DNA of 64,000 nucleotides, taken from the NCBI GenBank assembly GCA_963924565.1, contig OZ004610.1, forward strand, positions 7,812,001-7,876,000. The letters run 5' to 3'. Of this stretch, positions 40,881 through 49,263 are shown in pieces (the first letter of the stretch is position 1; each line of letters starts with the position of its first letter). The stretch is from Ascidiella aspersa (lineage: Eukaryota). The notes beneath the pieces are model-generated. The model saw only the letters and a list, made by a program, of their open reading frames with translations, was not told the origin of the DNA and searched no databases. The position numbers and the translations under genes are program-made.

Positions 40881-43800
40881 ATGGCTAACATTGCTACACA
40901 GGAGATGGTAGTTCCCGGTTAAGCACAACGCACTGGTGTATAATGTTGCTAACATGCTAAAGAAAAATTGAAATCAGGGTAATGCGGTAATATTGAAAAG
41001 CTGATTTTTCACCTTAGCGAACCAAATGTAAGTTAAATTTTGTTTAATAATGTTACTATCTATCAATGTTTAAAACAGCTTTAAAACGACAGCTGGCACT
41101 GGCCTAGAATCCGACCATTTTTTACAGTAACAAAACGACTTGGCTAAATTGTAATTGCATTGAAGAAGTTGACAAAATAGTAATACTTGACCCACTCGAA
41201 CGGCAAATCGCACCTTAACTGAAACTATGTTAACAATTCTTAAAACTGAATACGAATATGGAAAAGTTCTACACCGGTACTTATTGAATTTTCTTTTGTA
41301 CATCATTAAAATGCTTAATTAAACGGGGCTGAACAAATCAAACAATTATTAAATCAATGTTCAATGTTTGGTTAGGGTGCTGGTTAGGGTGCAGGTTAGC
41401 GTCTGGGTTAAGCATTATTATTTTCATCTAAATAATGTGTGTTGTGGTAGGATTCTTGACCAGTGCCAAAAAACTTTTGAATATTTTTAGGCTGTTATTG
41501 TCTGAGTTTTCTGAAATTTGTAAAAGCATGATTGGCAAATTTAATGCGAACTTGTCCAATTTGAACTGGAAATATCTGCAAAGTTCTGATATTGTAACTA
41601 TTGCGATTGATTAAGTTTAATTTATTTGCAACAATAGTAACAATTATTATTTGCACACACATTTTTTTTCACAATTTTTTTTTTTTACAGGGCTAATCAA
41701 TGCATACAGGGCTAATCAATGCATTTTTTTTTCACAATTTTTTTTTACAGGGCTAATCAATGCATTGAAGATATTTGCGAGGCAGTCCCGACAAAGCAAT
41801 GGTTTGAGTATGTTCGCAAACTTGGCCTGTCTGACAAGGAAATTGAAAACGAGATGAACAGCGGTGATCCTTTTTCTGAAAAGCAAAACCAAATGATTCG
41901 AAGATGGCTTAATCTTATGGGTATGACCAAACAGAAAAGTCACCCAACTTGGAATTAATAATGCATTTACTGGCTGTGCAACCCCAAAAATATGTAAATC
42001 TTAAAATTAGCCACCATGTTATTTTGTGTTTTTTCTTTTTATCAAGGATGAATATAGCAGACTATTCTTTTATGTCAGGTTCTTTCCTATTAAGGAGTAT
42101 TTATATCTTTTTCAGTTTTTTTCTTAACGCAGAATTTTTTCTTTTAAAGGTTCTTACCGACATGAACACAGAATATTGTTATTTGAGGTTAAAAAGGAAC
42201 TGTTTTCATCAAGAAACACAACAATTGATGCCCAATTTATTCCAAAACTTCGTTCAAGTAAGAAACAAGTGTAATTCTTCAAAGAATTGTACAAGTATAC
42301 CTATAAAGAGTACATTTTGATTACAACATGTGCTTAATGTATAAAAATTTCACGTTTAAAACCTAACACTACACAAAAACGATTTATACACTACACATAA
42401 AAGTTTTCTATGAGCGTCTTTAGTTCATACACTTGTAACACAACATATATAAAGTTAACCAGGGATGACCGATATTGGATCACAGTTGATACCCCATGCT
42501 AAGTGAAAGTTTTGGTACTTAATCAATACTAAGATGGTATAAGTGCCAATCCGATACTTGATTACTAGACAAATTTCAAGAAGCGATACTAGCTTGAAAT
42601 GCAAATTTATTGAATAATAAACCTAAAGATAACTAAACTTCTTAACGCTGAAGCAAATTTGGGCCTAATGACAAATAAAAGTACCTTTAAATGCTTAAAT
42701 TTCATCTGTTTTGCTTGTTTATATTAATGACATCATTTGGAATCGGATCGGATCGCAATAGTTTTTACTCAGAATATCAGTTATTGGTTTTGGATTAATA
42801 TGTTAAGTATCAGACAATTATTAACACTCTGTAATGATTTACGCTTCTATTATTAACTCTGATTTCTATGGAATATACTTCTGTACGTTTATCCTTTCAT
42901 TGTTGCCTCTCTCCGTAATTATGAATATATATGTGTCCAACATCTTGATTGCATTCTTTGCCTCCCTTTATAACTTGTGTAAGTTCACTATGCTTCGTTA
43001 GTCTTTCCGTTTCTCTATTTGAGTACTCCTTATATTCGTCATCTATTTAACGCTGTTTTTTGTTACAGCGACTCTGTATCGTAATTTGTTAATTAAAGCT
43101 AAGTAAACGTACTTGAGGTCCTTTAGTGTTAGTTACTTCACACTTATCACCCTGGAATAAATATCATGAAAACAAATTTCAGAATTTTGACACTTGTCTT
43201 GTTTCAGGAAGGGACAAAGCTTGGCTTGTGTACTCCTTCATCCACTTCTACACCAATGTGAGCATGTGGACAAACGATATCGTCCGGATGAAGTTTCAAG
43301 TTGACGAGGATCTTATTTCTCATATTAAACACGATTATCAACGAAACATAACTGAGCAGAAGTATCAAGCGTTCGCTTCGTGGATCTCTCAAAATAATTT
43401 TGGTTAGTATATCTAAACACCAGTTACGAATATGACTCCAACCGTCACCCCCTAGCATGCCCATATTTATTTGTAGATTCAAAGCAAGATGTTAACTTTA
43501 AAAAAAAAGCAAATTAAAAAAATAAGGTAACTGACATAACTAGCCCTAAAGCTAACTTGAGCTTATAAACTAAAAAAAAATTATTCCTATTTAAAAATTA
43601 TTTCCTATTAAGTTATTGCTTGGCCATAGTTTATTACATTGTGATCGCAAACTATAGCTGAAATGCCCTTTTTACTTTGGCCTGGACTCCGGATCAATGT
43701 TCGTTCAGACATCCATTTTGAAATGCCAGACTTTGAAAATGTTTTGCTTACATTTTGAATAATGCAAGTTCAAAAGACAAAACGCTAAACTTATAAAATT

Positions 43801-46800: not shown

Positions 46801-49263
46801 TGTTTATTTTCTACAGAATATTTTAATGTTTTTTGTTTTATTATGGTATAGATGATGATCTGAAAGTTGCAAAATCTTCAAGTAAGGTAATTTATCAATC
46901 TTAAAGAAGTTGATATTTATCAAACAGGGTAGTTTGATTTTTGATTTTTTATAATTTTTTTAATTTAATTATTTTCATTGGTTTAGGAATTTACAATAAT
47001 AAACTTCCAAAAAAATGCAATATTAGAATATCTAAAATCTTCTTTAAACACTGCAAATGATTGATTTATATTGTGTGTTTTTCTTCACTTAAACCAATTC
47101 ATTGTAGTTCATTTTCCTTGCAGGTCAAACCGCATGTGCAATGTCAGCCACAAATCATGATAAGCTACAGCTGGTTGCATCGCGATATTCCATTACAAGT
47201 AATTTCATGTTTTTTATTTTAAAATTGTGGTAGCCTAGATTCTAGAAGTTTTTTTTCACAGTGTCAGAAACTATTTAAATAAACCATTTTTTGTCAGAAA
47301 ATGTTTATTTGATAACATGAAATACAATTAAGGCTGCCTTGCAATATAAAGTGTAGAACTAAATTTTGTCAGGTTACAAATGAATTGAAAAACTGATATA
47401 TAGTATTCAACTGGATATGCGAACAAATGTTTGCGAAAATAAACATCTTTGTTAAATTAGTCTAAATGATTTGAAATTTTAAGCAAATCTTTGTGAATCG
47501 AAGCCCTTAGCGCGGATAGAAGAGAAATCCCTTTTTTCTTTTTTCATGCGCGTCAACCCGCATGACATAACCCGATAATGTAAAAAGGCTTTAAAGTAAA
47601 TATTTTTGTTGTTAGACTTCACTGGGTTGGTTTATTAGGCTAGAGCAGGGGTGTCCAACTCAAACATGCCGGCGTGCCAATTTTGATCTTATAACTTCTT
47701 CCCGTGCCAAAGTTTCGTAACCAAAACAGTTCTTTTTAATCATAAAAGCGCTTATTTTGCCAAAAATAAGAACGTTTATTTAAACTTGAAAAAAAAATGT
47801 CTAGTGGAAATGCGCATCACTACTTCAAAGTGTCTCTCGGTGAGCTCACTTTTGTTTCTTCACACCAAACTTTATAATATTATGTGAATGCTAGCCTCCA
47901 CACAGTATAATGTTACTATATCAAAAGTAATTGTTGGTTGTCATGATTGCCGCGATTGTTTTATATTGTGAACAAACAATGGTATATTGTGAACAAACAA
48001 ATAGGCTGTTTAATAAACTTAGTATTTTCTGACAATTGGCTGAATAACAAATTGAGCTTTTTTGGCAATTGGCTAAATAACAATTTTAGTATTGTTTGGG
48101 GAGGGCTTGCGTGCCATTTTTTATTAGGTCGTGCCGCTTGTTGGACACCCCTGGGCTAGAGTCTGTCTTGGGCCTCAACTATATGTTGCACCATCATATT
48201 GCTAGTTGTTACACAACCTGTAAAGGCAAACTTCACAGTGCCAATATGTAAAAACAACTCTTTAATTTTTAGACTTGTTGCTCTTTTCCAACAATTGTTT
48301 TATTTATAGATTGCACATGACCTTAAGAAGCTTCGTTACAATGTGTGGATTGATTCAGATAGAATGTCAGGAGACATCCTGACAAGAATGAATGAAGCTG
48401 TTACCAGCAGCGACATTATCATAATTTGTATGTCCAACGGATATTTTTCAAGTGTAAACTGTAAGGCTGAAGGCAACCTAGCATGGGAAAAGAAAAAGAA
48501 AATAATTCCGGTTATAGTTGAAAAGGATTTCAAGGCAACCGGCTGGCTTGGTATGATATATATTTTTATTTTTCAACTATTGTATTTAAATAGTTTTTTT
48601 TTTCTTAAAATTGGTTTTATAAACTCTGAATTATATTTAAACTTTGCATCAATTAACTTCTGAATAACCAACTTTGTTTAAAAAACTTGCTTAGAGAACC
48701 ACTTGCACAAATTTGTATAAACACTACTTGAATACTACTTAAGTCAATTGACAGCCTAATTTAACTTATTTTTTTGTAAGATGTTTTCGGAATTCAGCGA
48801 CAGTACTTGTTAACAGAAACTTATGTACCAGTATTAGGGATGTCCGATAATAGTGAATCGGAGATGATATTTGATGCCAAATAGGTTGGTGTCGGATGCT
48901 AAACGCATTCCAAATTAATATAGGTAATTTTTACCTTTCCAGGTAAATTTATTAAACATACTAGGTAAACAACAGAAGGTGTTAAACTTTAACATAATAA
49001 CCTGAAAAAAAATGTCTTTGAATGTTTTTATTATTTTTTTGTTTGTTTGTTTGTTTGAGCATACCAATGACGTCATTGGTATCGGATAGCAACGTCAAGT
49101 ATCGGAAATCCCTAATCAGTATCGCCATAAAATTACAATTTGGCGAATCATTTTTGTGATTTTGAAGCTTGTGTCTTTTTCAGAAACTATTGTTGCTGGC
49201 AAACTGTATTATGACTATACTCAAGATCTGAACGCTTTTCAGAAGATGCTTGACGAATTGTAA
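40881..49263 (+). CDS. Uncharacterised tandem death-domain plus TIR (TIR_2-type) protein, ~374 aa
   Basis: Exons 40881-40917, 41018-41027, 41751-41920 (DD1: WFEYVRKLGLSDKEIE...EKQNQMIRRW), 42150-42257, 43208-43402 (DD2: ISHIKHDYQRNITEQKYQAFASW), 43952-44062, 46720-46782, 46852-46886, 47124-47198 (QIMISYSW), 48310-48550 (VWID...MNEAV...CMSNGYFSSVNCKAE...IIPV...GWL) and 49184-49263 sum to 1125 nt, open to TAA. The first two exons are least certain and extra exons in 44063-46719 are possible. Confidence 0.8.
41095..41467. mobile_element. Non-autonomous TIR element with ggttagg-rich interior
   Basis: Ends ggcactggcctagaatcc / ggattcttgaccagtgcc; a related terminus gacactggtctagaatcc near 52455. 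No clear TSD. Confidence 0.55.
44167..44671. mobile_element. hAT MITE, same family as 26745-27233
   Basis: TIRs cagtggttct / agaaccactg; TSD acctataa. Confidence 0.9.
47646..48153. mobile_element. hAT MITE in an intron within the TIR domain
   Basis: TIRs caggggtgtccaac / gttggacacccctg; TSD ggctagag. Confidence 0.9.
48835..49114. mobile_element. MITE with TAGGGATGTCCGATA termini
   Basis: TIRs tagggatgtccgata / tatcggaaatcccta; TSD accagtat / atcagtat. Related atcgg-rich remnants near 42460-42810 and 62755-62900. Confidence 0.75.

What the first reader, a model, noticed from the sequence alone, without database searches (positions are those of the whole stretch)
40881..49263. Tandem death-domain protein fused to a catalytic-type TIR: candidate death-fold-activated NADase
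Seen: eleven exons, mostly invisible to the ORF track, join into one ~374-aa frame with architecture DD1-DD2-linker-TIR. The TIR reads IMISYSW...VWID...MNEAV...CMSNGYFSSVNCKAE...IIPV...GWL...KLYYDY. Established: this is the TIR_2-type pattern rather than the MyD88/TLR scaffold type. The Glu in CxxE sits where SARM1 (E642), plant NLR TIRs and bacterial TIRs have their NAD+-cleaving glutamate, and such TIRs are switched on by oligomerisation. MyD88 has one DD and a non-enzymatic TIR, while SARM1 uses ARM-SAM. Inference: two death domains could nucleate a filament that activates an NADase TIR, which would be an immune or cell-death module I do not recognise from vertebrates.
Basis: partly seen in the sequence, partly recalled or inferred. 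Interest (0 to 1): 0.78.

Follow-up and report, generated by a model that had tools for sequence, protein, structure and literature searches.

The report
Tandem death-domain TIR immune gene
This is a real, expressed animal gene that joins two death domains to a TIR domain, and the same death-domain pair also sits next to NACHT and kinase genes in this genome, but whether its TIR breaks down NAD+ is still untested.

Summary
The gene is real. RNA reads chain the exons into one + strand transcript. My model has ten exons and 359 aa, not eleven exons and ~374 aa.

The architecture is confirmed. DD1 is nearest the TNFR1 death domain, DD2 is nearest RIPK1/Fas, and a short linker leads to a TIR. The TIR belongs to a large, uncharacterised animal family. 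Its Glu (residue 307) aligns with the catalytic Glu of Cat1, RPS4 and TIR-1/SARM1, where MyD88 has Gln. However, that Glu occurs in over 70% of all TIRs, a TIR_2 match does not define a subtype, and the Trp that SARM1 needs four residues upstream is Asn here. NADase activity is plausible but not shown.

New here: the DD1-DD2 pair is a cassette found at least 22 times in this genome. It precedes TIR exons (five genes in a tandem cluster) and NACHT ORFs (five loci), and lies beside kinase exons (three loci). This suggests a death-fold recruitment network.

No relative carrying both DDs and this TIR was found elsewhere. Two earlier scan notes made the same Glu argument for other TIR genes of this genome.

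The parts
40998..41027 (+). 3' end of the 5' exon (its start was not determined). 41026-27 supply the AT of the start codon, and an in-frame TGA lies at 41002-04.
   Evidence: Loose end of 9 RNA reads before 41751 matches these 30 letters at 29 of 30 (sequence read). A GT donor follows.
41751..41920 (+). Exon 2: the G of the ATG plus the first two thirds of DD1 (residues 1-57).
   Evidence: Joint 41920>42150. Pfam Death 26.9-27.5 bits, above the 22.6 cut-off. DD1 profile hits the TNFR1 death domain at 4e-7 and 1.9e-7.
42150..42257 (+). Exon 3: the rest of DD1 (residues 58-94).
   Evidence: Joints 41920>42150 and 42257>43208. No family match of its own, so the assignment rests on position and length only.
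43208..43402 (+). Exon 4: the first two thirds of DD2 (residues 94-159).
   Evidence: Joints. Pfam Death 16-17 bits, below the cut-off. DD2 profile hits the RIPK1 death domain at 4.8e-4 and Fas at 0.008, and at 3.5e-3 and 4.8e-3 with ten sequences.
43952..44062 (+). Exon 5: the rest of DD2 (residues 159-196).
   Evidence: Joints 43402>43952 and 44062>46720. No family match of its own.
46720..46782 (+). Exon 6: linker (residues 196-217).
   Evidence: Joints 44062>46720 and 46782>46852.
46852..46886 (+). Exon 7: 35-base linker micro-exon (residues 217-228).
   Evidence: Joints 46782>46852 (9 reads) and 46886>47124 (11 reads).
47124..47198 (+). Exon 8: start of the TIR, strand A with IMISYSW (residues 229-253).
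   Evidence: Joint 46886>47124 and the loose end behind 47198 that matches 48310 onward. Matches the family consensus MISYxW. phmmer of this exon against family members reaches E 4e-4.
48310..48550 (+). Exon 9: TIR core (residues 254-334). It holds WID, the loop MSG, and NCKAE. The Glu 307 codon is at 48469-48471 and the Asn 303 codon at 48457-48459.
   Evidence: Pfam TIR_2 57.2 bits. 1918 relatives at E<=1e-3. The Glu column is invariant in alignments A1 and A4 and aligns to catalytic Glu residues.
49184..49263 (+). Exon 10: end of the TIR (residues 334-359) and the stop codon TAA.
   Evidence: AG acceptor and phase 1 fit. The spacing GWL-x5-GKLYYDY equals the family's. This joint was not covered by the reads laid.

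Best explanation
SHOWN. The locus is an expressed gene for a 359-aa protein with no signal or membrane segment in its exons. DD1 (TNFR1/DR3-like) starts at the N-terminus. DD2 (RIPK1/Fas-like) follows, then a linker of about 40 residues, then a TIR of a large animal family (consensus MISYxW...WID...MxG...S..Y..S.NC..E...IIP...GWLG...LY.DF). The DD1-DD2 pair is a fixed two-domain cassette. 22 of 23 DD1 matches in this genome have a DD2 match 0.4-2.4 kb downstream on the same strand. Along the same strand the cassette is followed by TIR exons (five genes in a 75-kb tandem cluster that starts with this gene) and by NACHT+NOD2_WH open frames (five loci), and it is flanked by protein-kinase exons (three loci).

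INFERRED. The cassette is a homotypic docking module. Cassette-bearing NACHT NTPases oligomerise when triggered. Their death domains then seed an assembly that recruits the DD-DD-TIR and DD-DD-kinase proteins. Clustering brings the TIR domains together, and the clustered TIR is the output. I take the output most likely to be cleavage of NAD+ or a related nucleotide reaction using Glu 307, as in SARM1, plant TIRs and bacterial Cat1 or TIR-STING. I put catalysis itself at about 0.45.
For: - Transcript chain and splice sites.
- Domain identities.
- Cassette pairing: 21 pairs come from matching (23 DD1 matches) to (21 DD2 matches, all paired).
- TIR exon after the cassette: 5 of the 7 cassettes in C4:7.85-7.93 Mb.
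- NACHT after the cassette: L020 and L021 (E 1.7e-20 and 4.9e-19); L025, L027 and L028 (E 2.8e-15 to 6.9e-19).
- Pkinase exons beside the cassette: L019 and L022, L029.
- Enzyme-like traits of the TIR family: the Glu is invariant in 96 of 96 (A1) and 21 of 21 (A4), and at least 90% in 53 further proteins (A7).
- The best solved relative of the family profile is the NADase Cat1 (5.2e-11). Next come RPS4 (3e-6), TIR-1 (3e-5), MyD88 (3.7e-5) and SARM1 (6.6e-4).
- The loop has Ser-Gly where MyD88 has Pro-Gly.
- Family members carry SAM (10 of 96) and ARM (5-6 of 96; 10 of 53) domains, as SARM1 does.
- Death-like domains fused to TIR effectors are described in bacteria (PMC8195603, passages).
Against: - No activity data exist for this family. 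As of 2020 only SARM1 was a known NADase among metazoan TIRs (PMC7075850), and several animal TIR clades are called uncharacterised (PMC13142454).
- The Glu is generic to TIRs.
- The Trp four residues before it is missing.
- Tyr, Asp and Gly counterparts of SARM1 Y568, D594 and G601 are present, but MyD88 has them as well.
- Linkage of the cassette to NACHT and kinase exons rests on adjacency and strand only; no reads were laid there.
- The kinase exon is not RIPK- or IRAK-like in particular (best matches CaMK and TTK).
- DD2 stays below Pfam's cut-off.
- A cassette shared by a TIR protein and kinases fits MyD88-IRAK logic just as well.
- No fold could be predicted.
Confidence: 0.42

Rival explanations
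1. MyD88-like adaptor. The TIR is a non-enzymatic docking surface that receives a signal from TIR-bearing receptors or other TIR proteins. The DD1-DD2 cassette then recruits the cassette-bearing kinases, following Myddosome logic (TIR in, kinase out).
For: - The same cassette lies beside Pkinase exons at three loci, which parallels MyD88 DD with IRAK DD-kinase.
- The ligand-binding Trp of SARM1 is absent.
- The Glu is also over 90% conserved in the non-enzymatic TLR1/2/6/10 group (PMC7075850).
- An adaptor role has been hypothesised for the invertebrate-wide ecTIR-DC proteins (PMC6321704, passages).
- The genome holds at least 22 TIR_2-type and 6 classical TIR exon matches as possible partners.
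Against: - MyD88 and TIRAP groups rarely keep the Glu (under 10%), whereas it is invariant here.
- The loop lacks the Pro of the TLR/MyD88 Pro-Gly.
- The DDs resemble TNFR1, RIPK1 and Fas, not MyD88 or IRAK. No MyD88 or IRAK chain appears.
- The family profile lies six orders of magnitude closer to Cat1 than to MyD88.
Confidence: 0.35
2. Regulator, decoy or decaying member. The gene is a fast-evolving copy in a birth-and-death family that damps DD assemblies, or is drifting, with no output of its own.
For: - All 6 coding differences between the assembly and the RNA individual change the amino acid.
- 2 of the 7 cassettes in the cluster have no TIR exon up to C4:7936000.
- Depth is low, about 2-6 reads from about 6% of the run.
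- Identity to the cluster paralogues is only 47-50% in the TIR and about 35-43% in the DDs.
Against: - The frame is intact over nine introns, all with GT..AG.
- Splicing is clean, with no competing joints.
- All family-invariant TIR residues are kept.
- Six of six non-synonymous differences is not significant against a neutral expectation of about 70-75% (my estimate, not computed).
Confidence: 0.1

Closest known systems
MyD88 (death domain - TIR adaptor)
   Same: N-terminal death-fold domain followed by a C-terminal TIR in a small cytosolic protein, and a likely homotypic DD assembly with DD-bearing kinases.
   Different: This gene has two DDs, not one. They resemble TNFR1/DR3 and RIPK1/Fas, not MyD88/IRAK. 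The TIR keeps Glu where MyD88 has Gln and has Ser-Gly instead of Pro-Gly in the BB loop. The TIR scores 57 bits with TIR_2 against 21.5 with TIR.
SARM1 / C. elegans TIR-1 (ARM-SAM-TIR NADase)
   Same: The Glu aligns with that of WVHKE. Tyr, Asp and Gly counterparts of Y568, D594 and G601 are present. An oligomerising N-terminal module sits in front of the TIR. Relatives of this TIR carry SAM and ARM domains.
   Different: There are no ARM or SAM domains here. The Trp at -4 is Asn. The SARM1-specific insertion before the Glu is absent (gaps in the TIR-1 alignment). The profile E-value to SARM1 is only 6.6e-4.
Bacterial Death-like domain (bDLD3) - TIR effectors and the 'effector-associated domain' principle (Kaur et al. 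2021, PMC8195603, passages seen)
   Same: One adaptor domain of the death-like fold is attached in the same genome to a STAND NTPase, to kinases and to a TIR. The reading is recruitment of effectors to a core sensor by homotypic contacts.
   Different: This is an animal gene with classical death domains used as a fixed pair. No operon context exists, and no test of interaction was done.
ecTIR-DC proteins of invertebrates (Gerdol et al. 2017, not held; known to me only through PMC6321704 and PMC8662601)
   Same: TIR proteins widespread in invertebrates and absent from vertebrates, with varied partner domains and no tested function. The TIR family found fits that description.
   Different: I could not see that paper or its classes, so I cannot say whether a DD-DD-TIR class is already listed there.
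Death-domain NLRs of amphioxus and echinoderms (PMC8662601, passages) and novel TIR combinations of amphioxus (PMC2575513, passages)
   Same: N-terminal death domains on NACHT proteins, and lineage-specific shuffling of TIR and death-fold domains.
   Different: Here the death-fold part is a two-domain cassette shared across TIR, NACHT and kinase genes of one genome. Those passages describe single DD or DD+CARD.
Cat1 (CRISPR-associated TIR 1, filament-forming NADase; PDB 9mud)
   Same: It is the best solved relative of the TIR family profile (5.2e-11). The WID...G loop and S..Y..S.xC..E motif line up.
   Different: Cat1 is a prokaryotic protein with a CARF-type sensor part, and it has Trp at -4. 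Similarity is at profile level only.

Membership tests
Death domain (Pfam PF00531) | Profile match above the curated cut-off (22.6 bits) | tested here: met
   DD1 exon scores 27.5 and 26.9 bits. 4 of 5 DD1 exons of the cluster match Death.
Death domain (Pfam PF00531) | Second domain also matches the profile above the cut-off | tested here: inconclusive
   DD2 exon scores 16-17 bits, E 0.007-0.014, and 3 of 5 paralogue exons match at E<=1. Profiles of DD2 exons hit only death domains at the top: RIPK1 4.8e-4, Fas 0.008, PIDD, FADD.
Death domain (Pfam PF00531) | Six-helix bundle fold | not testable with these tools
Each DD is split over two exons, and the joined model was left out by rule.
TIR domain (PF13676 / PF01582) | Profile match above the cut-off, plus strand A (Box 1) and the C-terminal part in the flanking exons | tested here: met
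   TIR_2 57.2 bits against a 28 cut-off, and TIR 21.5 against 21.3. Exon 8 IMISYSW and exon 10 GKLYYDY fit the family consensus.
Enzymatic (NAD+-cleaving) TIRs | Glu at the catalytic position of helix C | tested here: met
   Glu 307 aligns with the Glu of Cat1, RPS4 and TIR-1. It is invariant in A1 (96 sequences) and A4 (21 sequences).
Enzymatic (NAD+-cleaving) TIRs | Aromatic residue (Trp) four residues before the Glu (SARM1 W638; WxxxE) | tested here: not met
   It is Asn here (NCKAE), Pro in the three cluster paralogues aligned, and Asn in the family consensus. Cat1, RPS4 and TIR-1 have Trp. W638A lowers SARM1 kcat (PMC8266388).
Enzymatic (NAD+-cleaving) TIRs | BB-loop Gly and strand-B Asp (SARM1 G601, D594) | tested here: met
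   WIDSDRMSG aligns with FIDVDKLYAG of TIR-1. This is not discriminating, because MyD88 has both.
Enzymatic (NAD+-cleaving) TIRs | Measured NAD+ consumption that depends on the Glu | not testable with these tools
   This needs a bench assay.
MyD88 | One DD of the MyD88/IRAK kind, a TIR with Pro-Gly in the BB loop, and no catalytic-position Glu | tested here: not met
   There are two DDs. No MyD88 or IRAK chain appears among the DD hits. The loop has Ser-Gly, and Glu stands where MyD88 has Gln.
SARM1 | ARM repeats and two SAM domains before the TIR | tested here: not met
   Pfam on the six open frames holding the main exons found only Death and TIR. The 359 residues are fully taken up by DD1, DD2, a linker of about 40 residues and the TIR.

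The most novel reading that the evidence does not exclude
This animal runs a death-fold 'plug-and-socket' immune system. A fixed two-death-domain cassette is the common plug on NACHT sensors, kinases and TIR proteins. The DD-DD-TIR genes are true NAD+-consuming executioners switched on by DD-seeded clustering. That would be a second, SARM1-independent family of animal TIR enzymes, with a catalytic pocket that works without the usual Trp. It would also be an animal counterpart of plant TIR-NLR and bacterial Death-like-TIR defence.
Probability: 0.2. Interest if true: 0.8.

Novelty: new variant of a known kind. Interest (0 to 1): 0.5.

Why it matters
Only SARM1 is an established TIR enzyme in animals. 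Large animal TIR clades remain untested (PMC7075850; PMC13142454). This gene gives a small, well-defined, RNA-supported candidate, 359 aa with a TIR of about 130 aa, for asking whether another animal TIR family cleaves NAD+.

The shared DD1-DD2 cassette gives concrete, testable partners: NACHT and kinase genes with the same cassette. If the TIR proves to be a scaffold instead, the locus still shows a MyD88-like wiring built independently from death-receptor-type death domains.

In either case it is a lineage-specific elaboration, and invertebrate immune gene sets are known to produce those. That tempers the surprise.

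Tried and rejected
1. My guesses were an acceptor near 43264 and exon ends ten bases off.

2. phmmer of the TIR exon alone against solved structures found no TIR, only two sirtuin chains at E 0.75-0.9. A family profile was needed.

3. I looked for a relative with death domains among the 150 best TIR hits.
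- phmmer of the DD exons gave nothing.
- hmmsearch with the DD profiles against all 150 gave nothing below E 0.06.
- Pfam tallies on 96 and 53 of them did not show Death among the 25 families listed in each. In all, 38 and 57 families matched, so a single-member match cannot be excluded. P0018, at 3650 aa, was left out.
- Individual scans of ten hits with the TIR at a similar position found no Death.

4. The word search with the DD2 alignment (A5) found 72 candidates, none at E<=0.001. It sees only proteins of about 35-112 aa, so it says little.

5. The DD1 exon alone found only itself in the genome at E<=0.01. The paralogues appeared with local tblastn and the profile.

6. The idea that the cassette kinases are RIPK-like was dropped. 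Best matches are CaMK, TTK and Nek.

7. No tree with MyD88 and SARM1 was built, because no tool gave me their sequences. Placement rests on profile E-values and Pfam scores.

8. Literature.
- The search used 'death-tir', 'dd-tir', 'death-death-tir', 'dd-dd-tir', 'two death domains' and 'tandem death domains'. It listed 30 of 69 papers, and none showed a tandem-DD TIR. 'death-tir' occurred once (PMC2575513).
- Searches found no description either.
- Gerdol et al. 2017 is not held.
- Supplements are closed and were not asked for. The TIR partner-domain table of PMC2575513, the supplementary tables of PMC7075850 and PMC8662601, and the clade table of PMC13142454 may list this architecture or place this TIR family.

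9. The organism was not identified. Other agents' notes call the genome a probable sea squirt. I did not test this.

Full report
WHAT IS THERE. The region 40.9-49.3 kb of the window is AT-rich (GC 0.30-0.34) and has no long ORF. Stop-free stretches on the + strand hold recognisable pieces. Pfam finds Death in 41716-41955 (E 3.5e-6, 27.5 bits) and, weakly, in 43117-43404 (E 0.014). It finds TIR_2 in 48310-48660 (E 3e-15, 57.2 bits; TIR 21.5 bits).

RNA EVIDENCE. One RNA run of the same species label, X4 (raw reads, about 6% of the run read), was laid on 41250-47249, the 6,000 letters allowed.
- It gives six GT..AG joints, each seen in 5-11 reads starting at 3-7 places, all with the first mate on the - strand: 41920>42150, 42257>43208, 43402>43952, 44062>46720, 46782>46852 and 46886>47124.
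- Nine reads run off before 41751 into letters that match 40998-41027 at 29 of 30.
- Four reads run off behind 47198 into letters that match 48310-48339 at 29 of 30.
- No competing joint reached the listing threshold.
- The DNA contigs of run X1 show none of these joints, so there is no processed copy.
- The DD exons and the TIR exons therefore hang together as one chain. Short reads cannot phase the whole chain, and the last intron (48550>49184) lay outside the stretch.
- That last intron has GT..AG and the right phase. It gives GWL-E-TIVA-GKLYYDY, the exact spacing of the family consensus GWLGxxxxGxKLYxDF.

GENE MODEL. There are ten exons: ...-41027, 41751-41920, 42150-42257, 43208-43402, 43952-44062, 46720-46782, 46852-46886, 47124-47198, 48310-48550 and 49184-49263.
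- The start codon is split: AT at 41026-27 and G at 41751. An in-frame TGA lies at 41002-04.
- Coding bases sum to 1080, which is 359 aa. I did this by arithmetic.
If the 5' exon reaches that far, it is a 13-codon upstream ORF.

THE TWO DEATH DOMAINS. The window's gene has paralogues just downstream (see below), and their exons let me build profiles.
- The DD1 exon profile (five sequences) hits the TNFR1 death domain at 4e-7 and the DR3 death domain at 5e-6. With ten sequences TNFR1 comes at 1.9e-7.
- The DD2 exon profile hits RIPK1 at 4.8e-4, Fas at 0.008 and then PIDD. With ten sequences it hits RIPK1 at 3.5e-3 and Fas at 4.8e-3, then PIDD and FADD.
- No MyD88, IRAK, Pelle or Tube chain appears in these lists.
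- On its own, DD2 stays under Pfam's cut-off (16-17 bits).
- The second exon of each domain (42150-42257, 43952-44062) has no match of its own. Its assignment rests on position and length.

THE TIR. HMMER of the 80-aa core exon against 1.84 billion cluster representatives gave 1918 hits at E<=0.001 and 322 at 1e-10. There was no self hit, and single-domain identities reached at most 53%.
- Of the 150 best, 96 (those up to 620 aa) were aligned. Tyr, Cys and Glu of the motif Y..S.NC..E are invariant.
- Pfam on those 96: TIR_2 96, TIR 64, SAM_2 10, ARM_ARMC5 6, Arm 5.
- Pfam on 53 of the other 54: TIR_2 53, ARM_ARMC5 10, Arm 6, Pkinase 3, SAM 3, ADK 2, 5'-nucleotidase 1.
- A family profile (21 sequences, first row the window's exon) against solved structures gave Cat1 5.2e-11, RPS4 3e-6, C. 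elegans TIR-1 3.1e-5, MyD88 3.7e-5 and SARM1 6.6e-4.
- In the printed alignments the family Glu pairs with the Glu of Cat1 (WCWDE), RPS4 (WCVRE) and TIR-1 (WVHKE), and with Gln in MyD88.
- The primers listed in PMC8266388 show that human SARM1 W638 and E642 lie in the same WVHKE motif.
- In the window the Glu is residue 307 (codon 48469-71).
- Four residues before it stands Asn (48457-59), where Cat1, RPS4 and TIR-1 have Trp. The three cluster paralogues aligned have Pro.

HOW MUCH THE GLU PROVES.
[quoted passage not shown] Only SARM1 was then a known metazoan NADase.
- From section 5 of PMC13142454: the TIR_2 HMM hits nearly every TIR clade and is 'not useful for categorizing subtypes'. Several animal-containing clades are uncharacterised.
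- From PMC8266388: all SARM1 TIR mutants examined, W638A among them, lost about 100-400 fold in kcat.

THE LOCAL FAMILY. The TIR exon has paralogues of 47-50% identity at C4:7892395, 7902456, 7908437 and 7918518, which is 16-42 kb past the window's end, and one of 45% at C4:12943696.
- tblastn of the separate exon pieces against the window and 60 kb downstream shows the same order, DD1 exon > DD2 exon > TIR exon, four more times. There are also two DD1/DD2 pairs with no TIR exon up to C4:7936000.
- Two units look like a 16-kb tandem duplication: the offsets are 16,061-16,063 bases for five of the six exon pairs compared and 16,119 for the sixth.
- The Glu is kept in all three paralogue TIR exons aligned.

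THE CASSETTE ELSEWHERE.
- The DD2 exon has 21 matches in the genome and the DD1 profile has 23.
- Every DD2 match lies 0.4-2.4 kb downstream of a DD1 match on the same strand. One further pair was found by hmmsearch. That makes 22 of 23.
- I looked at 17 of these 22 cassettes.
- Seven are the C4 cluster, five of them with a TIR exon.
- At five loci (L020, L021, L025, L027, L028) the cassette is followed on the same strand by a 458-634-aa open frame with NACHT (E 2.8e-15 to 1.7e-20) and NOD2_WH.
- At three loci of a C6 cluster (L019, L022, L029) it lies among Pkinase exons. The kinase exon tested is not RIPK- or IRAK-like in particular.
- At two loci (L023, L026) nothing was identified.
- These links rest on adjacency and strand only.
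- Death-domain NLRs as such are known from amphioxus and echinoderms (PMC8662601, passages). Death-like domains shared between STAND NTPases, kinases and TIR effectors are the 'effector-associated domain' principle described for bacteria (PMC8195603, passages).

MECHANISM. I take the cassette to be a homotypic docking module. It would bring the TIR protein into assemblies seeded by cassette-bearing NACHT proteins, together with cassette-bearing kinases, with the clustered TIR as output.
- For an enzymatic output speak the invariant Glu, the nearness to Cat1, plant TIRs and TIR-1, the non-TLR loop, and SAM and ARM partners in the family.
- Against it speak the missing Trp, the generic nature of the Glu, and the absence of any assay.
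- The main rival is a MyD88-like adaptor feeding the cassette kinases.
- My odds: enzyme effector within the recruitment model 0.42, adaptor 0.35, regulator or decaying copy 0.1, other 0.13.

RELATIVES AND NOVELTY.
- No protein with both death domains and this TIR was found among the 150 nearest cluster representatives, nor by the word search with the DD2 alignment (blind outside about 35-112 aa).
- Paper searches found no tandem-DD TIR (30 of 69 papers listed).
- Gerdol et al. 2017, which classifies invertebrate TIR proteins, is not held, and supplements were closed. The architecture may therefore be listed there.
- Novel TIR and death-fold combinations are common in invertebrates: 20 of 28 TIR combinations in amphioxus are specific to it (PMC2575513, passages).
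- I file this as a new variant of a known kind.

LIMITS.
No fold evidence exists for any domain.
- No tree with MyD88 and SARM1 was built.
- The organism is not identified. Other agents' notes call it a probable sea squirt (unchecked).
- The genome is 308.6 Mb in 75 contigs and holds at least 22 TIR_2 and 6 classical TIR exon matches.
- Earlier notes of this scan made the same Glu argument on two other TIR genes of this genome and described the TIR gene at C4:12.94 Mb as a small CaaX-tailed protein.

Noticed in passing
window 41680-41765: The splice acceptor and the first ~15 bases of exon 2 (…acagGGCTAATCAATGCAT) stand three times in a row. The reads use only the third copy, at 41751.
   Followed up: partly
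window 40881-40922: ATGGCTAAC... opens a 13-codon frame ending in TAA. Its first three codons read Met-Ala-Asn, the same three residues as the real split start codon and the two codons after it. If it lies inside the 5' exon, it is an upstream ORF.
   Followed up: no
window 41914, 42236, 42251, 43375, 46758, 48334: All six coding differences between the assembly and the RNA-seq individual change the amino acid: L56F, F87L, R92C, A150T, A209T and R262G. R262G restores the family-consensus Gly. Six of six is not significant.
   Followed up: partly
window 44250-44650 and 45850-46450 (intron 5): Very high-copy repeats: summed contig depth of 10,000-65,000 against about 57 for the flanks in DNA run X1. 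RNA reads lie on both strands.
   Followed up: no
L023:1-4300, L027:3000-6550, L028:2900-6200 (C5): Long satellite-like arrays, reading as ...HTSRPYTHI... in several frames, fill the stretch between the DD cassette and the NACHT open frame.
   Followed up: no
G000:C4:7894975-7927512 (L014-L018): A ~16.06-kb tandem duplication carries two DD-DD-TIR genes. In the second copy the second gene has no TIR exon.
   Followed up: partly
proteins of alignment A7: Among long relatives of this TIR, two carry adenylate kinase domains (ADK, ADK_lid), one carries a 5'-nucleotidase C-terminal domain and three carry protein kinase domains. Fusions with nucleotide enzymes hint at nucleotide chemistry in the family. 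I did not identify which proteins these are.
   Followed up: no
window 9783-15699 (+): Two long overlapping ORFs (859 and 1124 aa) look like retrotransposon gag and pol, judged by eye from zinc-knuckle, reverse-transcriptase and integrase-like strings. No family scan was run.
   Followed up: no
L013:3160-4575 and 5241-6149 (C4:7879160-7882149): There is a long membrane-protein-like open frame and a partial second copy. Identical 88-aa minus-strand frames at 3762-4025 and 5336-5599 confirm a local duplication between the window's gene and the paralogue cluster.
   Followed up: no
L029:4660-4884, L019:7477-7701 (C6): The kinase-like exon downstream of the cassette reads HGAIKPxN and ...DIG instead of HRD and DFG. 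The upstream one has HRDIKPSN and DFG. This may be a kinase / pseudokinase pair around the cassette.
   Followed up: no
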